In this document: positions 4,613 through 64,000 of the stretch, piece after piece
How positions within the stretch are numbered: the first letter of the stretch is position 1
How the letters are laid out: every line of letters begins with the position of its first letter
Origin: Octopus sinensis
Taxonomy: Eukaryota
Assembly: GCF_006345805.1 (NCBI RefSeq)
Contig: NC_043005.1
Coordinates: 105,462,001-105,526,000 of the forward strand
Direction: 5' to 3'
Length of the DNA: 64,000 bases
Translations under genes and position numbers: made by a program
The notes under the pieces: model-generated
Seen by the model: the letters and a program-made list of their open reading frames with translations, nothing else
Databases searched by the model: none
What the model was told of the DNA's origin: nothing

Positions 4613-4658
4613 TCGCTCTGTATATATATGGAATAGTTACTATGAAGCATTGTGTAGA

Positions 4659-16925: not shown

Positions 16926-16930
<5 letters not shown>

Positions 16931-16932
16931 GC

Positions 16933-17312
16933 TTTTATTTGTTTCAGTCATTTGATTGCAGCCATGCTGGAGCACCGCGTTAAAGGGTTATAGTCGGAGA
17001 AATCGACTCCAGGACTTCTTTTTTGTAAGTCTAGTACTTATTCTGTCGGTCTCTCTTGTCGAACCGCTATGTTATGGGGACATAAACACACCAATATCGG
17101 TTGTCAAGCGATGGCAGTGGAACAAACACAGACACCACATACACATACACGACGGGCTTCTTTCAGTTTCCGTTTACTAAATCCACTCCCAAGATTTTGC
17201 TCGGCTCGAGGCTATAGTAGAAGACATCTTCCCAAGGTGCCACACAGTGGGATTGAACCCGGAACCATGTGGTTTGTAAGCAAGCTACTTACCACACAGC
17301 CACTCCTACGCC
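16933..17312 (-). mobile_element. tRNA-derived SINE (same family as 63151-63582)
   Basis: Reverse complement begins ggcgtaggagtggctgtgtggtaagtagcttgcttacaaaccacatggttccgggttcaatcccac and ends gactgaaacaaataaaa. Confidence 0.9.
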
Positions 17313-18690: not shown

Positions 18691-19972
18691 CCAAAACAAT
18701 AACAATATTTGATAACTATGATAACATGGACGTTTCTTGATAAACAACTCAGGTTTTCAGTTGACAATGGCGTGTCAGAGACAAAAGCTGGCCGCACCTT
18801 ACTGTTGTCAATGAAAGGTAAAATATTGTTCCACGCCAAGCCATCTAATTATATAGCTGATGGTGAGCACCTGAACATGACAGACTTCATACACCTACAC
18901 ACACACACACACACACACATATATATTTGCAGTTGTATACATACAGAATAACTTATAATCATACATACACATATGTGCATAAGTACATACATACATACAT
19001 ACATGCACACGTATGTATGTATAAATATATAATATCATATATATACACACACACACACATATATATAATACATATATAACATACATACATTTATATACAT
19101 ATGCATATATATATGTATGTATAATATATTCAAACTACATTCCATAATATAAAACTGGCAGAAGAATGGATAAAATTTCTCAATAGTTTCCTAGTGATTT
19201 TGGTTTTAATGAAAAACTACTGTTATTCCGATTGCTACTTCAATTTCGCTTTGAATAATTCTTTGAAGATTTCTTCATGTATTATCTGAGTAAGAATCAC
19301 AGAACATTAAATTATTGAACAGTAAAAGTCTGACCAATATTCAATCATTGATCAAAGAAAGATTAAAAGGTCCTGAAAAATATATTAATAAATAAGTAAA
19401 AATAAGAAATAAATCAAAAAAATTCCTTCTTGCTGAGAAGTAATGGTTTCAACTGCTTCTCAAAGAATAGCAGTTCATTTTCTTCCTTTGCCTTATAATT
19501 ATTATTAGTACTATTATGAGTATTATTATTATTTTGAAAGATACTTTAGATAGCAACACTGATACGTATGATCGACAAAATTTTTTGCAAGACAAATATG
19601 TGTGTGTGTTTGTGTGTGTGTGTGTTTGTGCGTGTATGTGTGTGTATAAAATGTACATACAACCTCATATAAACACTACATACACAAACGCACCCAATAA
19701 CGCACATTTGTGTATAATTTTATGTATGAGTAACAGCCTTCCTTTATACATGCTTTCAAAAGACGACCGTGCACTAATTTCATCTTTTTTTTACTATCAG
19801 CGCTGTTTCTTCTGTTTGTATTTCTTGCAATGCGTTTAGAAATGCACAACGTCTAAATCCATCGACAATGTTTGAAGACTTTAATAGTCTCATCCACTGG
19901 ATGATGTGATGTTGTCGTACGTTGCTGCCTCTTTATAATGGATTGGACTACAGTGGTAGGTGTAGGTCAGTG

Positions 19973-20178
19973 CACACCGGGCGAAGTGCTTAGCGGTATT
20001 TCGTCTGCTATTACATTCTGAGTTCAAATTCCGCCGAGGTCGACTTTGCCTTTCATCCTTTCGGGGTCGATAAATTAAGTACCAGTTACGCACTGAGGTC
20101 GATGTAATCGACTTAATCCGTTTGTCTGTCCTTGTTTGTCCCCTCTGTGTTTAGCCCCTTGTGGGCAATAAAGAAATA
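19973..20178 (+). mobile_element. 5'-truncated SINE with 15-bp target site duplication
   Basis: B box gagttcaaattcc and central domain ctttcatcctttcggggtcgataaattaagtaccag are present. The TSD aggtgtaggtcagtg lies at 19958-19972 and 20179-20193. Confidence 0.85.
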
Positions 20179-20765
20179 AGGTGTAGGTCAGTGGTCCTCA
20201 GATACTTTTAGCCTAATTTTTATAAAATTATATTATATTTCTATAATTTTAAATTATTTGGAATTACATAAAATATTAAAATATGTTATGTGTTGTATTA
20301 AAACCGATTTATTTCAAATAAATCTTAACAAAATCTTATATGGCCCACTCAGTCGTATGGAACGGAACCATTGGCGTAGATATTCTCACATTCACGCGCC
20401 TCACGCACACACAGACACTCACACACACGCATACATGCGCGCGCACACTTGCACACACGCATAAACACTCGTGCAGACGCGCACATGGGCGCACACTTGC
20501 ACACAGGCACACATGCACACACACTTACACACACTCGCACATGCGCGCACAGTTACACACGCGCACACGCTTTTACAAACTCACACGCTCGCGCATGTAT
20601 TTAAACATTTTAATGATATAAGCAATATATAATTAAACAAATTGTTGAGTACATCTAATTCCATTTTAAATATGTCCCTATGAAATGTGTATGTATATTC
20701 TAACTCTCTACGTTCTTCGATATCGCTTTCATCAATTCTTTTCTATCACTCATTGGGCTCTGGCC

Positions 20766-46212: not shown

Positions 46213-46251
46213 AGGCTCAGGAGTGGATGTGTGGTAAGTAGCTTGCTTACC
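46213..46251 (+). mobile_element. 5' part of tRNA-derived SINE head, interrupted
   Basis: aggctcaggagtggatgtgtggtaagtagcttgcttacc matches the start of the SINE at 63151. The continuation is at 54638-54682. Confidence 0.9.
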
Positions 46252-46472
46252 TTTGTCGTAGACAGACGTGTTTTTTTGGCGGTGAGTCAAACGTTTTGTT
46301 CAACGTGGATAATTTTTTTCTATTGGAATTGTTGTCTATTGTTGAATATTTTCGAATTGTTAAACTTTGAAAACTTTTGTGCTTTTTCCCGGTGACGGGA
46401 GAAAGTAATTGTTGAAATATTGAAATTATTAATATTGAACTTATTAATATTATTAATATTGAACTTATTAAA

Positions 46473-46900
46473 GCCGTTGTAGGCTTTATTGTCGTGCCCC
46501 CCCCCCCAGCGGGGGTGGCATTTGAACTGTTATCCTCATTAAGAGGGAAAAAATATTATAGGTTTCCCGTTTTAGGGGATAAACAATTTATTATTGCGAG
46601 AAAAATTAAATTTTAGCCGTTGTAGGCTCTATTGTGGCATCCGCCACTAGCGTGGGCGAGATTTGAACTGTTGTCCTCGTTGTGAGGAAAGAAAAAAAAT
46701 ATCATAGGTTTCCCGTTTTTTGGATTCTATATTTTATTATTGTGTGAAAAAAAAATATTTCGAACGTTGTAGGCTTTGTTTGCTACGTCTCGCCCCACCC
46801 CCAGCAGGGGTGGGATTTGAACTGTTGTCCTCGTTAAGAGAAAAAAAAGTAAAAAAATTATAGGTTACCCTTTTTCTGGGATTAAATTGTGTATCATTTA
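46473..46900 (+). repeat. Three copies of a unit of about 145 bp in the LINE 5' UTR
   Basis: Units start at 46473, 46616 and 46763 and share ttgtaggc, atttgaactgtt.tcctc and taggtt.ccc. Confidence 0.85.
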
Positions 46901-46912
46901 TTTCGAACGAAT

Positions 46913-48778
46913 ATGTCGGTCGAAATAATCCAAGAAAAGAACCAGCTGCAAGAGCCAGCAAAAGAGTTCGCGGCAGTAGCCGCTGTGTCTTAAAAAAATA
47001 TTACAATTGAAACGGAGAAGCTCTCCGAGCTTTTTGAGAGATCGAAAGAGGAGGATGGGGATATAAAGATCTCACCCGGATCCTTTCGGTTTGAACGGCA
47101 GTTTTTAAAAATAATTTCCACGTAACTAAACACTTTTAAACTTCCTATACTTGTAGAATGTGTTTATAAAACATCTTTTTCTCTTGGCTTTAATGAGAAA
47201 ATTCTATAGTTTGTAAGATATTTGTTGTTTTTTCTTCAATTTCTGCAATTTCAACCAATCAGTGACGTCAATTGAGGTGAAAACATTCTGTGCAGTATGA
47301 ATAAGTCCCTCGTTTAAGAAACAGATTGGGTTTATTTACATTTCTGAAGAAGAAAATATATACCCTCCCCCCCCCACCCATAGCCCTAACCCTAACCCTA
47401 ACCTTAACTAACTCTAACCCTAAAACAGATTGAAATGCAATAGATCGATAATAGGGTCATAATTATGGGTGATAATTTCATATGACACCGCTAGAAAAAC
47501 TGCCGTTCAAACCGAAAAGATCCTCTCACCCTCCCCTAGTGTAGAAAATCTGAAGAGAAGGACACTCGTTTAAAAAACGTACTGTCCTTCATCGAATAAA
47601 TTCAAGCACTTCGAAAAGTGCGAAATAGAAAAATGCCTGGCTCCTATATGGAAAGATATAAAATACATAGCGAGGGGCCGGGCATATGGAACAATAGAGG
47701 CCAGATTCAAGACGGCCGAAAAAGCCCAAGAGCACTCAGTGATTCCTCTAAAACGAAGGAGGTGGTGCTGCTCCCAACATACATGAGAAGGAGAACAGCA
47801 CGCGTCCGAATAAACGACGTACCACCATAAATTAAAGCAAGGGAGGTGATGGCCGTCCTGTTGCATAACAGGACGGACAAAATCACCTTCCTCCAAATTA
47901 CATGCACTGCCCCACAAAATTGGCAAGGGCAGAGCATCTGTGCGATTATTCAAGGAACGCAACAAGACATCGAAATGTTGCCAGAAAAAGTGCTCTTGGG
48001 GGAAGATATTGCCCCCAAGATTCAAGTAGAGGGCAAAAGGCCCAAGTGTTTCGAATATGGCAAAAAAGGCCACATTCGCGTAGAATGTGAAATATGGAAA
48101 AAAAAAGAAAAGTGTGCAGACATCAGGCCCTTCAACTATAGAAAAAGACCCCAAACCCGCACACAAATTAGCCTCCACAGAAACAAATACTCCCACCCCA
48201 CCATCTGTGGAACCCGCTCCCAAACAAAACACCAAAAAACTCCAGGCCATGCACACACCGGTCCCGACAGAAACAAATGCACCCACCCCCTCTGAAGTAA
48301 CAACTCCTCTGGAAGACACCATGGAGGTGACCGAGGGGGAGTTCAAGACACCCAGGAAAAAGAGAACACATGCACCTCCCCATCCATATCCCCCACAAAG
48401 AAAAAAGAAGAAAAACAGCACCCAACAGAGAAGAAAAGGTCCCGCTCCACTGTCCCAGAAGAGAAAATAAAAAAGAACAAAGACGAAACAAAAACCTTGG
48501 TAAAGTTTGATACCAGGGATAAATATATTACGGACATTTTAAAAAAGCGCCACAAAGTGGAGCTGTTGCTGTAGCCCGAGGGCAGGGAAGAGAGATGTGC
48601 CTGGATACCAGAAAAATTGTATAATGAAATGAAGGGTAGGCATCCGAGGACCATCACGAACATCCCGGACCTTCCGCGGTATTTCAAAGAGTTTTTGAAG
48701 GAGCAGGAGGAAAGGACTGCCTCACTTGTGGTGAGGTCAGCCCCAGCATCACCAATAAAAGAAAAAGTCAAAGAGTAA
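46913..48778 (+). pseudogene. ORF1 (RRM-like region plus degenerate zinc knuckle), interrupted by a MITE, stops and frameshifts
   Basis: MSVEIIQEKNQ.., KYIARGRAYGTIEARFKTAEKA, VVLLPTYMRRRTARVRINDVPP and VEGKRPKCFEYGKKGHIRVEC. Confidence 0.82.
47078..47523. mobile_element. MITE with 29-bp TIRs and 8-bp TSD (possibly Merlin-type), containing (CCCTAA)n
   Basis: TIR ggatcctttcggtttgaacggcagttttt / aaaaactgccgttcaaaccgaaaagatcc (1 mismatch). The TSD tctcaccc lies at 47070-47077 and 47524-47531. Confidence 0.92.
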
Positions 48779-48807
48779 GTAGAACCCTTGCTTTTCTTTT
48801 GTTTTAA

Positions 48808-51800
48808 ATGACTGCACTTAACCTTGGGTGTTTGAATGTGCGTGGTCTGAGCTCGAAGTGGAAGCAAGCTTGTTTCCTCGACGACCTCAGATCACACGAT
48901 ATGCATGTGATGGTTGCTACAGAGACCAAGCTGGACAGTCTACAAGCCTTCTCTCCCCTCCTCAATGACTATGAGAAAATCATGTCTCCTAGCCGGACCG
49001 GAGGGCGAGGGAGTGTAGTAGTACTGGCTCGAAAAGGTTTGGCTCTGCAGACAAGTACAGTCTATGTAGACCCAGAAGGTGGGCTGGTCGTCCTTGATGT
49101 GACATACAGCAGTAAGGCCTTCAGGTTGATCGGGATCTATGCACATTGTGCTAGAGGATTCCAAACTGATTTCTATCGGCGCCTAGAGAACTTTCTCGTG
49201 AGGTTGAAGACATTAGTGGTGTTAGGTGACTATAACGCTATTGTTGATGCGCGCATCGATAGCGTTGGCTGGATCTATAGGAAAGTGAACTCACGTCTCG
49301 TGGATCTGCTCAAGCAGTTTCAGCTGGCTGATCGTTACAGACTTGACCATCCGAACGCCCCAGAGTGGACCTGGATGAGTGGCGACGGAAGGTTCAAGTC
49401 TTATCTAGACAGGATAGTGATAAGTACTAGAGATAAGTCTAGTTTTAGCTGTCCACAGCTTGTCCAAGTAGCATACACTGACCATAGAATGGTTAAGTGT
49501 AGACTGGACATAGATAATACAGTTAAGAGAGGATCCGTCTACTGGGAGCTGAACAAGTCTATTTTGACTTGCGAAGCATACCGTAGCCGGATTGAGGAAT
49601 TAGTACAGAGGTCGTTAACCGGCGCGGTGGTTAATAACCGATGGTGGTTCGCCCTGAAGAGAGCCATTCGTTTTGAGTCTATTAGGTTTAGCCATCAGCT
49701 AAGACTTGATAAGTCCAAAATAGAAGGGTAACTAGTTAAGGATCTAGGGGAGGCGTTGAGGTTGGGCTCTGCATCTCACATTTTGGCAGCGAGAACGGCC
49801 TTGGACCATCACCTCAAAGTCAAGCATGAGGGGGGAAAAGTTCGGGCTAAAGTGCACGCATTGGGCCGTGAGGGAATTAGTGTAGCCGGATGGGCTCGTA
49901 CGGTAGAAACCCAGAGTGGCAATGATCCCACAATTAAGTCTCTCGTGGATGACAATGGGAGTTCGGTCGATGGGCGGGACGAGATGTGTGAGGCGATTCA
50001 CAAGCACTTTGCCCAGTTGTTTGGAAGTGGCGGAGCGCTGGATCATGGCGAGGCCCTTAGGGACTTCCTGTCTGCCGGCCAGCGTCTCTCGGCAATCACG
50101 GCCGAGGAGGTAATCGAGGTACTGGGTGAATGCCCCGGGGAGAAGTCACCGGGTCTCGATGGTCTGCCTTATGAATTTAACAAAACTATGCCAGACTTGT
50201 TCGGACACCTGCTGGCCAGCGTCTACGCCAATTGGCAGCAGAATGGGAAAATTCTCAAGTTTGCGAGCCGGGGGGGGGGGTGACGTTGATCAGGATGGAC
50301 CCGAGCAAGGAAGACGAGATAGGGAACTTCAGGCCCATAACTCTGCTGAACACGAAGTTAAAGATTTTGGCCAAGGTGCTAGCGAAAAGGTTGGCGCGAG
50401 TCGTGGAAAAACTTGTCGGGGAAGCGGAAACGTGCGCTATCCCGGGCAGGACGATTAACGACAATCTCCACCTTATACGCTACTCCTTAGAGAGGGCGGG
50501 GAAGATTTCTGGCGCAGGAGGGAGGGGAGGCACTGGTACATTTAGACCAGTCTAAGGCATTCGATAGGGTCGACCATCGGTACTTGGCGGCGGTCCTCGA
50601 GAAGGCTGTCCTGGGCCCGACCTTCTGCGGTAGGATTGCTGCGTTGTACAGCGACATTGAGTCCGTCGAAAAAGTGAACGGCTTCCTTTCAAAGCCATTC
50701 AGGATCGAACGCTCAGTGCGTCAGGGGTGCCCCTGTCCCCGCTTTTGTATATACTGGCTCTCGAGCCATTATTGCGGAAGTTGGAGGCACTAGGGGGCGC
50801 ACCGTATGATCTATGGTATGGAAGAGGAGCTACGGCGTATGCGGTTGACATCTCCATCATCGTGGCGGATGAGGGCCAGCTTCCAGTGGTGGAAGAGGCT
50901 ATCAAAAGTTACGAGGCGGTGGTAGGAGCAAAGGTTAACAAGGACAAGTCAATTGGTTTGCAGCTCGGCACCTGGAAGGGCAAGCCGATGCCGTCCAATA
51001 ACGTCGTGGGGCGTTGGACGGAAGGTCCTGTTAAGCTGCTCGGAGTCTGGTTCGAGCCAGACCTCCAAATAGAGAAAAATTGGAGTGAGGTGGCCAGCAA
51101 GGTGACTGCTCTAGCCAGACCTGGTCTGGGCGGGGGTTATTCTTGCTAGGAAAGGCGGAGGTGTTACAGATGTTTATAGCATCGGTTATCACCTACCGTC
51201 TGACCGTGGTGCCTTGCCCCAATTTGTGGCTGAACAAGTTGGAGAGAATCCTTTTCCACTTTTTGTGGAAGGGAGGAAAGCCACTCGTGAAGCGCTCTGT
51301 CTGCTGCCAGAAACCGCTAAAGGGTGGGCTAGGGATGCCTTAGCTGAGGATGCGAAAATTCGCGTTAAGGTTGAGGCACCTCTGGCTTTACCTGGATGGA
51401 GAGCAGGTGTGGTCACCGCACGTTCGGTTCTACATTCCGCAATTAACGTCCTTAACGGACATTGTTAATTGGATCAAGCAGAGACCTAGGCTGGGGGACT
51501 AGCAATTGGAGTGCCGCCAGGCACTTCTGCAACTCTTTTGGGTGGGCAATGCCGGCAATAGGAGTTCCACCGCGGATTTCTATAGTGGGTTAATGGAGGT
51601 TAAGTCCGAAGACGCCTTGGGGGAAACCCTGGGCTACGATGAAAATCAGTTAACCTGTTCCGGAGAACTTTCGGGCCAGGGTATCTGGACAATTACCAGA
51701 AATCCCTGGCTTGGCAGTGCTTCTGTGCGGCGTTATCTGTTCGTGACAAACTGTCAAGGCACGGAAGTGCTGTCTCGCCGACATGTCCGAGGTGCGGGCA

Positions 51801-52185
51801 GGACAGGGAAACCGTCTTGCACGCATTTGTGGAATGTCCGGAATTAACGGGACTGATAGTTTTCGCAGAGCAACTGCTGTCATCGATGGGAAGAGTATAG
51901 CTATCAGCTGAATCTATCATCGAGATTGTGCTGCCTCCTGCCCTCAACAGGGAAAGGAAGGCTTGCTTTTTCTTCGTAGTAGCCATACTGAAAGAAACAG
52001 TATGGAAGACGCGTGTGAGAGGCATAGTGTCGAGTACCTTTGTATCCGGCCAGGGGTTGGTTAACTTTTTTAGTTACCACCTCAGTAGTAAGATCAGGCT
52101 GGAGAAGAGGTACCTGTCACGAGACAGATTCATGAGAAGATGGAAGCCTGTGGCGAGGAAGTTGGGAGTGTTTGGCATCAGGTAA
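48808..52185 (+). pseudogene. ORF2: AP-endonuclease, reverse transcriptase and C-terminal CCHC, frameshifted
   Basis: EN motifs LNVRGL, VATETKL, VLGDYNA, SYLDRI and TDHRMV. RT motifs KSPGLDGLPYEF, FRPITLLNTKLKILAK, LDQSKAFDRVDH, VRQGCPLSPLLY and YAVD (decayed YADD). C-terminal CPRCGQDRETVLHAFVECP. Confidence 0.95.
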
Positions 52186-52496
52186 GTGGAAGCCAAAAAC
52201 AGAAAAGAAAAAGTAAGGGGTCTATCCTGGTGGTCGGATGCCAATCTTTCAAAGAAGCCATTACAAATTTCATTTGTAATGAGCAACGCTTAACTCAAAA
52301 GTTATAAACATATTTATTAAATTATTGTATATTTTAAATTGTAAATATTTAATCGCTACAGCTAGTTCATCTTTTTATATTTGTCTGTTCTTGTTCGTCC
52401 CCTCTTTGTAATGCCTTCATGGCAAATATTTATGAAATAAAGTAGCTTTCTTCCCATGAGTCTTTGAGACTTCCCATGATTCATTGTTGTCTGTGT

Positions 52497-52510
52497 GCGC
52501 ATGCGCCATT
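52497..52510 (+). promoter_or_regulatory. GCGCATGCGC (NRF1-type) overlapping CGCCATT (YY1-like) motif near the element 5' end
   Basis: Motif match only, about 40 bp inside the element. Confidence 0.3.
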
Positions 52511-53132
52511 GTGTTGTACACTGAAGAAGATAGCCGGCTGTGTCTATCCCGCCAAAAGAAGCTGCTGCAAGGTAAGTCTCTTCTCTTGGACCCGGTGTGG
52601 GTCGTTGTCTGTGCTTATATGTTTTACAAACAGGGAATCCTCACTGAATTCAGGATGTTGGTCTACTTGTGGTTCAGCAATATGCTCCATAGTAAATAAA
52701 GATTTTTTTCTCATTTTCTGGTAGGCGTATCCTTCAAAATACTTTGTTTTTACAACAACAACATTTACCATTATTGGAAAACTGTATTTCAAGTGCTCAC
52801 ATGAAGGGAAAATTTTTTTTCTCATTGTGCGAAATATAGTTTGGTGACTATCTTGCCACCGAAAGTCGTTCGCCGTTTTTAAATAGTGTGTATTTTACGA
52901 CTACGTTGGAAAGCTGTATTCAAGTGGAGCAGTCCAGGTTCGAATTGGAGTACCATAAGTGCTTGAAGTACATGAATGCCCAGAAGATTTTTTTGCTGTG
53001 TTTTCTTCTTTTGAACTATTGTTTTCTTCAATTGTGACTTTTTATTGAACTGTTTGTTTTTTTTTATTTCTTCTTCCCTTTTGTTTCCTTTTGAATTCTC
53101 TCTTACCTTTTTTGTGAACTATTGCTTTGAAC

Positions 53133-54410
53133 ATGGCGAAAAAAATACGGATAAGATTGTTTTGTGGGAGATTGTCCCACCGAAGCAGTGGTTAAAAGAT
53201 ATGGAGGAGAGGATGATGGTGGTTAGAACTTATTCTAAAGTTCTTGATTCCATCACCATCTTCCCAAAACCAATTATAGAAAATGAACTGAAAGACTATT
53301 TGTCCTCTGTGAAATACATATCCCGCGGTGTCAAACATGCAACCGTATGGTTGCTGTTCGACTCCCGGGAAAAGGTTCGCAATTTTGCGAGCCAGCCATA
53401 GGAGGGCAACGGAATTCTGTTCTTCCCGTCGTACTGCGGGAGGAAATTAATAAGAGCCTGGATATGTGTGTTACCCCCAGGAACCGAAGCGGGTTGGATT
53501 GAAGATACCATCCGACGGGGACTGGGGAATAGCGGGCCCAGGCTCTTAAATGTAAGGGTATTGCCGGCGGTCGATTGAGAAGGGCCAAAAGCAATTTTGA
53601 CCCTGTGGACCCCATCGGCCGTAACATATCTGGTTTTTCCAGATTTTTTAAAAATGGATGGCTCAAGTTATCCAGTGATACTTGATGGTCGCCTCCCCTT
53701 GTGTCACTTGTGCCTGGAGTCAATCCACATTAAGAAGGAGTGTCCCCGGGGCCGTGGTAAATCCCGGAGCAGGGAAAGGTGAAGGTGCCCTCCGCTCTCT
53801 CGTTGCAGGGAGAAACGGAGGAAGTTGTTGAGGCATTGGCTTCAACGAGTAGGAAAAGAAAGGTGAGCAACAATGGTTGCTCACCAACAGATGCGCAGGT
53901 TGCGGGAGAAGAGGAGGACCCCTCTAGGTGTGCCGGTAGAGGCCCCGACGCCCGCAACCGTGAAAAGGAAAAAAGAAAAGAAAGAGAAACGGGAGACTGT
54001 CGGCGGATGTCGTTGTGCCGTCGACCGAACCCGATGATCCTCCGGTGGAAGGTGTGCCACTGGAGCGAGACACTCTGTCAGTGAGAATTGTGCCACTGAC
54101 AGAGCAGGCTGAGGCCCCTCCCCGTGAGAAGGAGGCGAAAACCATCGTTTTCTATCTCGGGGAAGGGCCTGCCGAGAAGTGCTTGGACGGTCTTCCAGGC
54201 CGAGAACGATTGGACTCGGACTGTATAGACTGTCCAGGCTGGCCTCCGCAGGTGGCTGCAGAGGCCGTGAGTCTGAAAGAGCTGTTTGCGGTCATGGTGA
54301 CCTTCTAATAAGGAAGAATTTGCATTCCTCTTTCTGGGCCCCGACCTGCCGATGCAGGCTTTCCTGCAGGCGGCGTGTCATTTGCTTGGGGCTCCGATGA
54401 GGAGAATTGA
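53133..54410 (+). pseudogene. ORF1 homolog with CCHC knuckle, several in-frame stops
   Basis: VKYISRGVKHATVWLLF, ILFFPSYCGRKLIRAWICVLPPG and VILDGRLPLCHLCLESIHIKKECP. Confidence 0.8.
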
Positions 54411-54637
54411 TTGTGTGTTTACTGAATAATTTTGTAATGGAGTATTAAGTCTAATAATTGTAAAAACTGTCGTTAAAAAAAAAAGGAACAATGTTTTAGA
54501 GAAGCAGAAAATCGGTGGGTGTTTTCTGCCTTCTCTCATCAACATCATCCTTGTTTCATCATTCACCTCATCAATGTATATGTCCAGCCGGCAAACTACT
54601 CTTTGTAATGCCTTTATGGCAAATTTTAATGAAATAA

Positions 54638-54682
54638 AGTAGCTTGCTTACCAACCACATGGTTCTGGGTTCAGTCCGACTG
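54638..54682 (+). mobile_element. 3' continuation of the split SINE head (includes B box), then truncated
   Basis: agtagcttgcttaccaaccacatggttctgggttcagtccgactg continues the sequence broken at 46251. Confidence 0.9.
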
Positions 54683-55289
54683 AAATATAAAATAAATATA
54701 AAATAAATATAAAAAGGTTAAACAGCAATTTTATGTGTGTAGCAACGTCGCAACATGTGGCAACACTGGTTCTACACATGTGGCAACATGTGGCAACACT
54801 GGTTCTACACAGCGACGGAGTAAAATGACGGTATAAAATTTCATTGCTACTTTGAGAAATTATTGCTCTGCTTTACGAGTTTTCGTATTCGGCGCTCTCT
54901 CCGGGAACCAATTTACTCGTATATCGAAGCATCACAGTACTTATTTGTTATAGCAAACGCATAATATATCGAGTGTAAATCAATAGAGTTGGATAAAATT
55001 TCTGTTTTGTTGCTTATCACTGGTTTCTACATTAAGATAGATACATTCGTACAAACCACTTTAGGAGTCTCTTTGCAGCTCCGCTGATGAAGGCATTATA
55101 GGTCCTGTAATATTACTATATTTTATATCTTATATGTAAAGAATAATGTTATATGTATTTATGTTATTCTAATTATCAGCTTAGTAAATAAATAAACAAG
55201 TTAACATAATTTAATGTCTAAAAGTAGATGAATCACCTGTTGTTCTCCTCCATTTTCTTATTTGCTATATATATATATATATAGATGAT

Positions 55290-56273: not shown

Positions 56274-56509
56274 GTATATACATGTATGTATGCATATATA
56301 TATATAAGTATCACTTGAAGAGGAAAGTGAGAGTTGAGAGGCAAGTTTTGTCTAGTGAATGTTTTAAAAAAAGATGGGTGAATGTATCAAGGATGGCACG
56401 TATGAATGACGAAGTCACTTTGACTATGATTCTATGAACTGTAAAGATTAATACAGAGAGTTGCTTATTTGCAAAAAAAAAAGAAATATAACATGTGACT
56501 TCATTGTCC

Positions 56510-56781
56510 GATGTTACCGTGGTTACCGTAGGCTTTTCTTTCCACGGGTAAACCTCACCTGTCCTCCCCTTTACACTTCATATTGACATTTCTGTGATAA
56601 CGATCCCTATTGATCAATTTTTTCCTCCCCCCTTTTTTATCCCCCCCTTTGTGTCCTCTTTCTTTCCTTTTACGATCCCTTTTGATCGAAAACCAAACCC
56701 CCTTTTTTACCCCCAAAAGAAAAGCTCTGCCTTGTAATTTGTCCTGTCTGTGTGCAGCCCTGTGTGGCTAATAAAGAAACA
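56510..56781 (+). mobile_element. 5'-truncated Tx1/L1-like 3' UTR abutting (TCTA)n
   Basis: It is C/T-rich and ends ttgtaatttgtcctgtctgtgtgcagccctgtgtggctaataaagaaac, the same architecture as the other LINE 3' ends here. Confidence 0.55.
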
Positions 56782-63150: not shown

Positions 63151-63312
63151 GGCGCAGGAGTGGCTGTGTGGTAAGTAGCTTGCTAACCAACCTCATGGTT
63201 CCGGGTTCAGTCCCACTGCGTGGCATCTTGGGCAAGTGTCTTCTGCTATAGCCCCGGGCCGACCAATGCCTTGTGAGTGGATTTGGTAGACGGAAACTGA
63301 AAGAAGCCTGTC

Positions 63313-63358
<46 letters not shown>

Positions 63359-63582
63359 GTATGTGTGTGTTTGTGTGTCTGCGTTTGTCCCCCTAGCATT
63401 GCTTGACAACCGATGCTCGTGTTTTTACGTCCCCGTCACTTAGCGGTTCGGCAAAAAGAGACCGATAGAATAAGTACTGGGCTTACAAAGAATAAGTCAC
63501 GGGGTCGATTTGCTCGACTAAAGGCGGTGCTCCAGCATGGTCGCAGTCAAATGACTGAAACAAGTAAAAGAGTAAAAGAGAG
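63151..63582 (+). mobile_element. Full-length tRNA-derived SINE (uninterrupted reference for the split copy at 46213/54638)
   Basis: A box tggctgtgtgg, B box ggttcagtccc, internal (TA)n(TG)n and a 3' (gtaaaaga)n tail. Confidence 0.92.
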
Positions 63583-64000
63583 AGAGAGAGTAATTTAAAA
63601 TTTTCCCACAGCATACAATTTCATATGAAGCATTGAGTTTGTGCATTTCTCTGAAGAACTTCTAGAGAAGGAGCATGAGTGACTGCCAGTTTCTAATTCG
63701 ATGAAGAGTTCTCAGAGTATCTTTGTGATAAATGGTCAGATGAGATCTTGCAAATAATGAATCTCTAATACTTTCCTTCTTATATAAATGAAAGAGTTAC
63801 AGCCTAAAATTTGGACATTAGATTCAATACTAGTTTCTTGGCTGCAATTAGAATCTACAAAACATTGTTTTCAATCGTTTTCGAATAACGTGAAAGGGAG
63901 GCAGTGGGGAACACCTTTACAGTGTTGTAGTCCCTGCACTCAATGGTATGGCTTAAGATTGAAGTGGCATGATATGAGGATAGTGAGCTGAGTCTTTCTG

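What the first reader, a model, noticed from the sequence alone, without database searches (positions are those of the whole stretch)
46213..54682. Tandem Tx1-like LINE and ORF1-only partner inserted at the same 15-bp site inside a SINE head
Seen: agtagcttgcttacc occurs at 46237-46251 and 54638-54652, and a 13/15 copy occurs at 52441-52455. These bracket two head-to-tail elements: a near full-length ORF1+ORF2 LINE (46252-52440) and an ORF1-only element (52456-54637). Removing both restores the SINE head seen uninterrupted at 63151 and 17312(-). The site lies between the Pol III A and B boxes. Known: Tx1-clade LINEs are often sequence-specific (U2 snRNA, tRNA arrays, 5S, microsatellites, and Xenopus Tx1L in Tx1D). 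Inferred: two independent insertions at one nucleotide point to a LINE family that targets a high-copy tRNA-derived SINE, plus a non-autonomous coding satellite using the same integration machinery. I do not know of this being described.
Basis: partly seen in the sequence, partly recalled or inferred. Interest (0 to 1): 0.9.

Follow-up and report, generated by a model that had tools for sequence, protein, structure and literature searches.

The report
SINE-head-targeting LINE plus ORF1-only partner
In an octopus genome, two dead retrotransposons, a full-length L1/Tx1-type LINE and a shorter element that encodes only the LINE's first protein, sit head to tail at exactly the same 15-16-bp site inside a SINE; a third, independent copy in another octopus genome starts at the same site, so this looks like a site-specific LINE lineage of a known general kind with a new target.

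Summary
AGTAGCTTGCTTACC occurs at 46237-46251 and 54638-54652, with a 13/15 copy at 52441-52455. These bracket E1 (46252-52440) and E2 (52456-54637). Joining the flanks restores positions 1-68 of the SINE seen intact at 63151(+) and 17312(-).

- **E1** is a dead L1/Tx1-type LINE. It has an ORF1 and an ORF2 with endonuclease, reverse transcriptase and zinc finger.
- **E2** has only an ORF1 homologue and no trace of ORF2. It shares with E1 only the last 39 bp (92%), which form a small conserved hairpin.
- **New evidence:** an E2-like element in Octopus sinensis begins at the same SINE position, in a different locus, 40 nt into the E2 sequence. This is an independent event.
- An E1-like copy in O. 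bimaculoides is followed, across an assembly gap of the right size, by the body of the same SINE.
- Five related LINE 3' ends from other families lie elsewhere.

Site-specific integration is therefore the best reading (about 0.7). It is not a new principle. Tx1-clade LINEs are known to target other transposons and to form tandems around a TSD, and ORF1-only "half-L1" elements are known. Two points remain untested: Tx1 clade placement, and whether E2 is a propagating family.

The parts
46214..46236 (+). Left part of the interrupted SINE-A head (SINE positions 1-23), with an A-box-like GGAGTGG motif
   Evidence: BLAST of the intact SINE (63151-63620) aligns positions 1-38 to 46214-46251 at 92%. 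Sequence.
46237..46251 (+). Target-site duplication, copy 1 (AGTAGCTTGCTTACC). With the preceding A the duplication may be 16 bp.
46252..52440 (+). E1: a near full-length, dead L1/Tx1-type LINE of 6189 bp (5743 bp without the nested MITE)
   Evidence: Pfam finds Exo_endo_phos, three RVT_1 fragments and zf-RVT. tblastn of a 1145-aa relative (P0016) covers residues 1-1124 in six frame segments. The best PDB matches are human L1 ORF2p.
46472..46848 (+). 146-bp tandem repeat (2.6 copies) in the E1 5' UTR
   Evidence: TRF; self-BLAST
46994..48800 (+). E1 ORF1 region. It has a conserved N-terminal region aligned to P0012 and a degenerate CCHC knuckle (CFEYGKKGHIRVEC). It is frameshifted and interrupted by the MITE.
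   Evidence: Three-frame translation. tblastn of P0012 gives 37% over 82 aa, E=8e-11, plus a collinear second segment that ends at the knuckle.
47078..47523 (.). Nested 446-bp MITE with terminal inverted repeats of about 29 bp and an 8-bp TSD, TCTCACCC (47070-47077 and 47524-47531)
   Evidence: Inverted self-match; sequence; short relative at L009 5383-5477
48808..52182 (+). E1 ORF2. The APE endonuclease is an intact 307-aa ORF at 48808-49728. The RT lies at about 50181-51146 with YADD mutated to YAVD. The zf-RVT lies at 51643-51897. There are at least five frameshifts and one stop.
   Evidence: The L001 copy keeps YADD.
52402..52440 (+). E1 3' tail, shared with E2. It contains the hairpin TGCC-TTCAT-GGCA and ends in ...ATGAAATAA.
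   Evidence: 39 bp at 92% identity to 54599-54637. The hairpin is predicted and shows compensatory changes in related tails.
52441..52455 (+). Inner copy of the target 15-mer (AGTAGCTTTCTTCCC, 13/15), sandwiched between E1 and E2
52456..54637 (+). E2: a 2182-bp ORF1-only element, with a 5' UTR of about 670 bp, ORF1 at about 53123-54305, and a 3' UTR at 54306-54637
   Evidence: tblastn of P0012 gives 63% over 207 aa, E=2e-87, including the CCHC knuckle CHLCLESIHIKKEC. No ORF2 remnant with two full-length ORF2 queries at E<=0.01. No nucleotide similarity to E1 except the tail.
54599..54637 (+). E2 3' tail (hairpin TGCC-TTTAT-GGCA, ...ATGAAATAA)
54638..54652 (+). Target-site duplication, copy 3 (AGTAGCTTGCTTACC)
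54653..54682 (+). Right part of the interrupted SINE-A head (up to SINE position 68), with a B-box-like GGTTCAGTCC motif. The SINE body is missing beyond 54682.
   Evidence: BLAST aligns SINE positions 23-68 to 54637-54682 at 91%.
63151..63620 (+). Intact reference copy of SINE-A, uninterrupted at the site
16929..17312 (-). Second uninterrupted SINE-A copy

Best explanation
A lineage of L1/Tx1-type LINEs in Octopus integrates site-specifically into the tRNA-like head of an abundant SINE (SINE-A).

**Inferred mechanism.**
- The element-encoded APE endonuclease nicks the bottom strand at 5'-GTGGT^A(A)GTAGC-3' (top-strand notation).
- Reverse transcription of an RNA ending in ...GAAAUAA is primed there.
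- The top strand is cut 15-16 bp downstream.
- Each event therefore leaves a 15-16-bp duplication covering the anticodon-arm equivalent, between the A-box-like and B-box-like motifs.
- Each event regenerates the 15-mer on both sides of the insert, so a second element can enter next to the first. This gives the TSD-E1-TSD-E2-TSD tandem.

**The two elements.** E1 is a now-dead autonomous member. E2 carries only an ORF1 homologue plus the same 39-bp 3' tail, whose small hairpin is conserved by compensatory changes in related LINE and SINE tails. E2 was therefore most likely mobilised in trans by the ORF2 protein of an E1-like LINE, in the manner of HAL1.

**Shown:** the anatomy, the restored empty site, the shared tail, the absence of ORF2 in E2, and a third independent junction at the same SINE position.

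**Inferred:** endonuclease specificity, trans-mobilisation, and that E2-type elements propagate as a family.
For: 1. **Precise structure.** The 15-mer occurs three times, and joining the flanks restores SINE positions 1-68.

2. **E1 and E2 are different elements.** They share no nucleotide similarity except the last 39 bp. Their ORF1 regions are only distantly related: P0012 matches E1 ORF1 at 37% over 82 aa but E2 at 63% over 207 aa. The tandem is therefore not a duplication.

3. **Independent event in another genome (L009).** O. sinensis CM016886.1 carries an E2-like ORF1 gene, P0012, that is 63% identical in protein (58% in the database search) and about 70% in DNA.
   - Its 5' junction reads ...GGCTGTGTGGTAAGTAGCTTGCTTCC|TGTGCATGCG, the same SINE position.
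   - It has different flanks.
   - Its first base aligns to E2 position 41, a different 5' end on the same target nucleotide.

4. **Consistent case in O. bimaculoides (L001).** An E1-like copy at 83% identity runs into a 1720-N gap, and the gap is followed directly by the SINE-A body in the same orientation. Insertion at the site predicts a spacing of about 1736 bp; the observed spacing is 1721 bp.

5. **Specificity of the lineage.** Five 3' ends of related LINE families with the same tail type lie elsewhere: L006, L007/8, L009:1-638, L015/16 and window 56781.

6. **Family type.** The architecture is APE, RT and zf-RVT, and the endonuclease is closest to human L1 ORF2p. An O. vulgaris repeat annotation lists L1-Tx1 families.

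7. **Tail hairpin.** MFE folds predict it in 7 of 8 tails. The stems are TGCC/GGCA, GCCC/GGGC, AGCC/GGCT, GACC/GGTC and GATT/AATC.

8. **Precedent.** Tx1-clade families target transposons with 16-bp TSDs, and tandem insertions sandwiching a TSD are described (PMC4494074). HAL1 encodes only ORF1p.
Against: - Only three junction-resolved events, in two loci, plus one case across an assembly gap. No genome-wide census of flanks was possible.
- The L009 copy has lost its 3' part and the right half of the SINE. Its TSD and 3' junction are therefore unseen.
- Both interrupted SINE copies were found by searching for the elements, so they say nothing about how often the site is occupied.
- The inner 15-mer differs at 2 of 15 positions while the outer two are identical. 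CTTCCC variants of the site exist in other SINE-A subfamilies. The tandem could therefore have arrived as one read-through unit.
- Tx1 clade placement is untested.
- No second complete E2-type copy was found, so family status is open.
- The host SINE copy is a 68-bp head fragment only, which is unusual for a SINE insertion.
Confidence: 0.7

Rival explanations
1. There was one insertion here, not two. A read-through transcript of an E1-15mer-E2 tandem at another locus was retrotransposed as a single unit. Only the outer, identical 15-mers are then the TSD of this event, and the inner 13/15 copy was inherited from the source locus.
For: The outer copies are 15/15 identical and the inner one is 13/15. 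The inner variant CTTCCC resembles the site in other SINE-A subfamilies and in L009. E1 and E2 are in the same orientation with nothing but the 15-mer between them.
Against: - It needs an 8.4-kb transcript that bypasses E1's own 3' end.
- Two mismatches in 15 bp are unremarkable for elements this decayed.
- It still requires two site-specific insertions at the source locus, so it changes the history and not the mechanism.
- Sequential insertion is the accepted reading of similar tandems.
Confidence: 0.15
2. E2 is not a member of a propagating ORF1-only family. It is a one-off copy, or a few copies, of a full-length LINE of a sister family that lost ORF2 by internal deletion or template jump, and it inserted using its parent's machinery.
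For: Only one complete E2-type copy is in hand. The database search with E2's ORF1 returned a single relative, P0012, and that copy is truncated about 130 bp after ORF1, so it cannot show whether ORF2 followed.
Against: - E2 keeps a complete ORF1 with its own stop, then a 330-bp 3' UTR.
- It has no detectable remnant of either end of ORF2, which is not what a random deletion usually leaves.
- The post-ORF1 stretch is shared with the 30%-diverged L009 copy, and no ORF2 lies within 10 kb downstream there.
- HAL1 shows that such families arise repeatedly.
Confidence: 0.35
3. There is no true SINE targeting. The endonuclease has only a short nick-site preference (for example GTGGT^A) that the abundant SINE head happens to contain, so the coincidences reflect a hot spot in a very common sequence.
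For: A SINE-B copy whose tail resembles E1's is inserted at CAGTGGT^AGGTGTAGG, outside any SINE-A, with a 14-15-bp TSD. SINEs make up about 4-12% of octopus genomes.
Against: A 6-nt preference would occur about once per 4 kb genome-wide. Yet all three resolved E-type junctions are at the one SINE-A position, and the second-strand cut is at the same 15-16-bp offset. The SINE-B observation is a single case, and its partner LINE is unknown.
Confidence: 0.1
4. The finding is an artefact or the events are not independent: a misassembly of the window, or amplification of a SINE+insert composite by segmental duplication or hitch-hiking.
For: The region is repeat-rich, and the O. bimaculoides locus is full of gaps.
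Against: - The window has no Ns.
- The junctions are base-precise with a clean restored empty site.
- L009 and the window differ in flanks, by 30% in the element, and in the element's 5' start.
- E1 and E2 are unrelated in sequence.
Confidence: 0.04

Closest known systems
Target-specific Tx1-clade LINEs: Tx1L in the Tx1D piggyBac element; Tx1-Mar in Mariner-N4_AMi; others in LTR elements, Harbinger, microsatellites, and U2, U5 and 5S genes (Kojima 2015, PMC4494074; Kojima & Fujiwara 2004 as cited there). I also recall a tRNA-array-targeting family, Dewa, but only from memory; the passages I read did not cover it.
   Same: - An APE-type LINE of the L1 group that integrates at one defined position of another repeated element.
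- TSDs of about 15-16 bp.
- Tandem insertions that sandwich a TSD.
- Non-autonomous partners sharing the target preference.
   Different: - The target here is the tRNA-like head of a SINE, between the A-box-like and B-box-like motifs. I did not find this target reported.
- The host is a cephalopod.
- Clade membership was not tested by RT phylogeny.
- The number of copies examined is tiny compared with the hundreds used to define those families.
HAL1 (half-L1) non-autonomous L1 derivatives of mammals (Smit 1999; Bao & Jurka 2010, as cited in PMC5753468)
   Same: It encodes only an ORF1p homologue, lacks ORF2, and must use the ORF2 protein of an autonomous LINE.
   Different: - E2 shares a specific 39-bp structured 3' tail with its putative partner rather than a poly(A) tail.
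- It integrates at the partner's specific target.
- Its ORF1 is only distantly related to E1's: P0012, the relative that is 63% identical to E2, matches E1 ORF1 at 37% over 82 aa. The true parent is therefore another family.
- Family status is unproven.
Stringent-type LINE/SINE partnerships through a shared 3' stem-loop (Kajikawa & Okada 2002, as cited in PMC4494074)
   Same: A conserved 3' tail with a short hairpin is shared by E1, E2, related LINEs and a SINE (SINE-B, window 19973-20179).
   Different: L1-group elements are usually thought of as poly(A)-dependent. Here the tail is a defined sequence ending in AATAAAGAAATAA-like motifs. Recognition has not been tested.

Membership tests
L1-group (L1/Tx1) APE-type non-LTR retrotransposon | N-terminal apurinic-like endonuclease in ORF2 | tested here: met
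   Pfam PF03372, E=6.7e-10, on the intact 307-aa ORF at 48808-49728. All nine PDB matches at E<=0.01 are human L1 ORF2p, L1 endonuclease or engineered L1-EN loop variants (LR1, LTX); best E=3.6e-13.
L1-group (L1/Tx1) APE-type non-LTR retrotransposon | Reverse transcriptase followed by a C-terminal zinc-binding domain | tested here: met
   Three collinear RVT_1 fragments, each below Pfam's cut-off on its own, plus zf-RVT, E=1e-8. Collinear with residues 1-1124 of a 1145-aa relative.
L1-group (L1/Tx1) APE-type non-LTR retrotransposon | ORF1 upstream of ORF2 with a nucleic-acid-binding module (CCHC knuckle) | tested here: inconclusive
   CCHC-like motifs are visible in E1 (degenerate) and E2 (intact pattern). 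E1 ORF1, E2 ORF1 and P0012 are homologous. No Pfam family matched the three ORF1 fragments tested.
Tx1 clade specifically | RT phylogeny groups the element with Tx1 rather than L1 proper | not testable with these tools
   No reference Tx1 sequences or RTclass1 were available. Cluster names of 20 relatives carried no clade labels. The only indirect support is that L1-Tx1 is the only L1-group type among the recently active LINE types in the O. vulgaris table I read.
Target-specific LINE | Independent copies at the same position of the same target sequence | tested here: met
   E1, E2 and the L009 E2-like copy all join the SINE head after AGTAGCTTGCTT(A)CC. L001 is consistent across a gap. The sample is very small.
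Target-specific LINE | A large share of the family's copies flanked by the target (>20% criterion of PMC4494074) | not testable with these tools
   No DNA-level search of octopus genomes was available. The metagenome scan with the tail pattern gave only chance hits.
Target-specific LINE | Tandem insertions sandwiching a TSD | tested here: met
   TSD-E1-TSD'-E2-TSD. Described for Tx1-Mar/SINEU-3.
Target-specific LINE | The endonuclease cleaves the target sequence specifically | not testable with these tools
   This needs a biochemical assay.
HAL1-like ORF1-only non-autonomous LINE derivative | Encodes an ORF1p homologue and no ORF2 | tested here: met
   P0012 against E2: 63% over 207 aa. No ORF2 hit in E2 with two full-length ORF2 queries.
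HAL1-like ORF1-only non-autonomous LINE derivative | Multi-copy family that amplified in the ORF1-only form | tested here: inconclusive
   Only one further relative was found (L009). It is truncated about 130 bp after ORF1, and no ORF2 lies within 10 kb downstream.
tRNA-derived SINE (host element) | tRNA-like head with A and B boxes; dispersed multi-copy | tested here: inconclusive
   Dispersed copies occur in the window, L001, L006, L009 and L015/16. GGAGTGG and GGTTCAGTCC motifs are present. ARAGORN gives a cloverleaf only at a relaxed threshold, nothing at default, and there is no Rfam tRNA hit.

The most novel reading that the evidence does not exclude
Octopus genomes harbour a long-lived pair of lineages: an autonomous L1/Tx1-type LINE whose endonuclease recognises the anticodon-arm region of a high-copy tRNA-like SINE, and a HAL1-like ORF1-only parasite. 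The two known relatives of the parasite are already about 40% diverged in protein, and it homes to the same nucleotide through a shared structured 3' tail. This would be a LINE lineage that uses SINE copies as a safe harbour and inactivates their Pol III promoters, plus a coding non-autonomous element with inherited site specificity.
Probability: 0.35. Interest if true: 0.6.

Novelty: new member of a known kind. Interest (0 to 1): 0.45.

Why it matters
If a genome-wide census confirms it, this adds a SINE head to the list of targets that L1/Tx1-type endonucleases have evolved to recognise.

- It gives a natural example of a LINE using a very abundant, dispensable repeat as a safe harbour, splitting that repeat's Pol III promoter as it inserts.
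- It gives a non-mammalian counterpart of HAL1 that keeps both the tail and the target of its partner.
- Such endonucleases interest those working on targeted integration.
- Octopus transposon biology is under active debate, so family-level insertion preferences matter for reading SINE and LINE landscapes there.

It does not change the understanding of how LINEs work.

Tried and rejected
1. **Was L001 the orthologous locus?** No. Only dispersed repeats are shared with the window.

2. **Looked in L009 for the right half of the SINE and the 3' end of the E2-like copy.** Both are absent; the element breaks off about 130 bp after ORF1.

3. **Fetched every available relative of the ORF2 C-terminus to read 3' junctions** (P0005-P0011).
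   - All belong to other families (44-73% protein identity).
   - Those that reach the 3' end are not in the SINE site.
   - The closest (L004, 73% protein identity) ends before the 3' end.

4. **Scanned JGI metagenome contigs with the tail pattern GTAATGCCTTNATGGCAAA.** All 29 hits were chance matches.

5. **Tried to label the clade through source names of 20 full-length relatives** from the representative search. No L1 or Tx1 labels came back.

6. **Tested the SINE head as a tRNA with ARAGORN and Rfam.** Only a relaxed-threshold cloverleaf was found; the Rfam hits are microsatellite artefacts.

7. **Considered that the 15-mer is part of each element's terminus.** Rejected as a separate explanation.
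   - The left 15-mer is contiguous with the SINE's left part and the right one with its right part.
   - The L009 copy starts 40 nt into the element but at the same target nucleotide.

8. **Considered a shared GTGGT^A nick preference**, from one SINE-B insertion. It is a single case and is kept only as a minor rival.

Full report
**Observation**

AGTAGCTTGCTTACC is exact at 46237-46251 and 54638-54652. A 13/15 copy (AGTAGCTTTCTTCCC) lies at 52441-52455, and one-mismatch copies lie inside two uninterrupted SINE heads at 63174-63188(+) and 17289-17275(-). That is five matches against 0.08 expected by chance (sequences).

BLAST of the intact SINE (63151-63620, here called SINE-A) against the window places SINE positions 1-38 at 46214-46251 and positions 23-68 at 54637-54682. 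Removing 46252-54637 therefore restores a continuous SINE head, with a 16-bp overlap made of the 15-mer plus one ambiguous A. One correction applies: the host copy is only a 68-bp head fragment, and the SINE body is absent after 54682. The window has no Ns.

**Anatomy of E1 (46252-52440)**

- Pfam finds an APE endonuclease on an intact 307-aa ORF (48808-49728), three collinear RT fragments and a C-terminal zf-RVT.
- A 1145-aa full-length relative (P0016) aligns over residues 1-1124, but in six frame segments. ORF2 therefore carries at least five frameshifts, plus a stop at 49729-31.
- The RT motif YADD reads YAVD in E1, while a copy in O. bimaculoides keeps YADD.
- Every PDB match of the endonuclease at E<=0.01 is human L1 ORF2p, the L1 endonuclease, or an engineered L1-EN loop variant; the best is E=3.6e-13.
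- Upstream lies a frameshifted ORF1 with a degenerate CCHC knuckle. It is interrupted by a nested 446-bp MITE (47078-47523) with an 8-bp TSD, TCTCACCC.
- The 5' UTR carries a 146-bp tandem repeat.

E1 is thus a near full-length but dead L1-group LINE.

A recent O. vulgaris repeat annotation lists L1-Tx1 among the recently active LINE types, alongside RTE, Dong-R4, CR1, Hero and R2 (PMC13282606). From my own knowledge of those superfamilies, L1-Tx1 is the one that fits an APE endonuclease, a CCHC-type ORF1 and a zf-RVT. I could not run an RT phylogeny against Tx1 references, and the source names of 20 relatives carried no clade labels. 'Tx1-like' therefore remains a reasonable but untested label.

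**Anatomy of E2 (52456-54637)**

E2 shares no nucleotide similarity with E1 except the last 39 bp (92%, E=8e-11). It encodes an ORF1 homologue:
- The O. sinensis protein P0012 (LOC115225585) matches E2 at 63% over 207 aa, including the knuckle CHLCLESIHIKKEC.
- P0012 matches E1's ORF1 at 37% over 82 aa (E=8e-11), with a collinear second segment that ends at E1's knuckle.

E2's ORF1 is broken by two stops and two frameshifts. It ends with its own stop and is followed by a 330-bp 3' UTR. Two full-length ORF2 queries find nothing in E2. This is the half-LINE architecture known from mammalian HAL1, which 'encodes only ORF1p' and arose several times (PMC5753468).

**The shared tail**

I aligned the last 75 nt of eight sequences: E1, E2, a SINE of another family in the window (SINE-B, 19973-20179) and five related LINE 3' ends. 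The five were Argonauta L006, Logan contigs L007 and L015, L009:1-638 and window 56781. The alignment shows a conserved block, TGTCCCCTCT-TGT, then a small hairpin, then AATAAAGAAATAA.

MFE folds predict the same hairpin in 7 of 8 tails. The stems differ by compensatory changes: TGCC/GGCA (E1, E2), GCCC/GGGC, AGCC/GGCT, GACC/GGTC and GATT/AATC. The register was chosen by eye, so this is suggestive rather than a formal covariation test. It fits a structured 3' recognition element of the 'stringent' kind, and it explains how an ORF2-less element could be mobilised in trans.

**Is the site preference real?**

The databases available held few octopus sequences, so the test is small, but the results all point the same way.

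1. **L009 (O. sinensis CM016886.1).** This locus carries an E2-like element with an intact 281-aa ORF1, about 70% nucleotide identity to E2.
   - Its 5' junction reads ...GGCTGTGTGGTAAGTAGCTTGCTTCC|TGTGCATGCG, the same position in a SINE-A head.
   - The flanks differ from the window.
   - The element's first base aligns to E2 position 41 (local alignment score 76; shuffled maximum 61).
   - A different element 5' end on the same target nucleotide is what independent target-primed events with a fixed second-strand cut produce. A duplicated composite would not produce it.
   - The 3' part of this copy and the right half of the SINE are lost.

2. **L001 (O. bimaculoides CM046626.1).** An E1-like copy at 83% identity breaks off at E1 position 4624, at a 1720-N assembly gap. 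The first sequence after the gap is the SINE-A body from SINE position 194, in the same orientation. Insertion at the site predicts a spacing of about 1736 bp, and 1721 bp is observed. Gap sizes are estimates, so this counts only as consistent.

3. **Related families.** Five 3' ends of related LINE families with the same tail type are not in the SINE site. The preference therefore belongs to the E1/E2 group and not to the whole clade.

As a rough estimate from my own assumption of a few hundred thousand SINE-A copies in a genome of about 2.7 Gb, a random insertion hits this one nucleotide position with probability of order 1e-4. Two further independent hits by chance can be dismissed.

**Mechanism**

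This part is inferred from the established target-primed reverse transcription model and from what is published for Tx1-type elements.

1. The endonuclease nicks the bottom strand at GTGGT^A(A)GTAGC.
2. The RNA's ...AAUAA end pairs with the 1-2 A/T bases at the nick.
3. The top strand is cut 15-16 bp downstream.

The duplicated stretch corresponds to the anticodon-arm equivalent of the tRNA-like head, between the A-box-like GGAGTGG and the B-box-like GGTTCAGTCC. An insertion there separates the two promoter halves of that SINE copy.

Each insertion leaves the 15-mer on both sides, so a second element can enter beside the first. Kojima (2015, PMC4494074) describes exactly this pattern. [quoted passage not shown] The same paper lists Tx1 families that target piggyBac (Tx1D), LTR elements, Harbinger elements, microsatellites, and U2, U5 and 5S genes.

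**Rivals**

- **Single composite insertion.** The identical outer 15-mers against a 13/15 inner copy, together with CTTCCC variants of the site in other SINE-A subfamilies, allow the reading that E1-15mer-E2 arrived here as one read-through unit. That changes the local history, but it still needs two site-specific events at the source.
- **E2 as a one-off.** E2 may be a single ORF2-less derivative rather than a member of a propagating family. This is the least settled point.
- **Short nick-site preference.** One SINE-B insertion at CAGTGGT^AGGTGTAGG hints at a GTGGT^A preference. On its own that cannot explain three hits at one SINE position.
- **Misassembly or duplication of a composite.** This is unlikely, given the clean junctions and the differences between the loci.

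**Novelty and verdict**

I found no report of a LINE that targets a SINE head, nor of site-specific LINEs in octopus, in the papers I could search. The principle is nevertheless well established for this group of LINEs, and ORF1-only derivatives are known.

I rate it a new member of a known kind. Confidence in site-specific integration into SINE-A is about 0.7. Confidence that E2 represents a propagating HAL1-like family is about 0.35-0.5.

Noticed in passing
window 47078-47523 (TSD 47070-47077 and 47524-47531); L009 5383-5477: A 446-bp MITE is nested in E1's ORF1. It has terminal inverted repeats of about 29 bp (GGATCCTTTCGGTTTGAACGGCAG...) and an 8-bp TSD, TCTCACCC, and it carries a (CCCTAA)n telomere-like run at 47384-47423. 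A roughly 95-bp version with both ends adjacent is present in O. sinensis.
   Followed up: partly
window 19973-20179 (TSD 19959-19972 and 20180-20193): A SINE of another family (SINE-B) has a 3' tail that resembles the E1-type LINE tail, including the hairpin. It has a 14-15-bp TSD, and its nick context CAGTGGT^A resembles the SINE-A site TGTGGT^A. It may be a SINE partner of this LINE group and a hint at the endonuclease's core preference.
   Followed up: partly
window ~56305-56781: This is a 5'-truncated 3' end of a related LINE family (tail ...GCAGCCCTGTGTGGCTAATAAAGAAACA), embedded in a long (ATCT)n microsatellite. It is similar to the ENA contig L005.
   Followed up: no
window 46472-46848: A 146-bp tandem repeat (2.6 copies, 72% matches) lies in the E1 5' UTR. 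It may be promoter-related.
   Followed up: no
window 54683-54798: The host SINE copy stops at SINE position 68. It is followed by (AAATATAAAAT)x2.9 and a GCAACATGTG-type repeat. Why only the head fragment remains is unexplained.
   Followed up: no
L009 10001-10846 (O. sinensis LOC115225585, P0012): The E2-like ORF1 is an intact 281-aa ORF annotated as a gene, yet the first Cys of its CCHC knuckle is Phe (PPKFHLCLEPGHIKKNC). A second gene model spans 3129 to beyond the locus end. Both E2 and this copy have a splice-donor-like AAGGTA(A/G)G about 110 nt into the 5' UTR.
   Followed up: no
Patella caerulea proteins KAK6191799-KAK6191823 (cluster of P0058): At least eleven ORF2 proteins of a distantly related LINE (31% identity in the endonuclease) have alternate consecutive locus tags, SNE40_003393 to SNE40_003415, on one chromosome. 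This looks like a tandem array of the kind site-specific LINEs form.
   Followed up: no
L001 9330-9553: A SINE-B variant in minus orientation with an (ATT)n tail abuts the 5' side of the E1-like copy in O. bimaculoides. The Argonauta LINE in L006 likewise ends in ...GAAATAA(TTA)n, so some relatives carry microsatellite tails.
   Followed up: no
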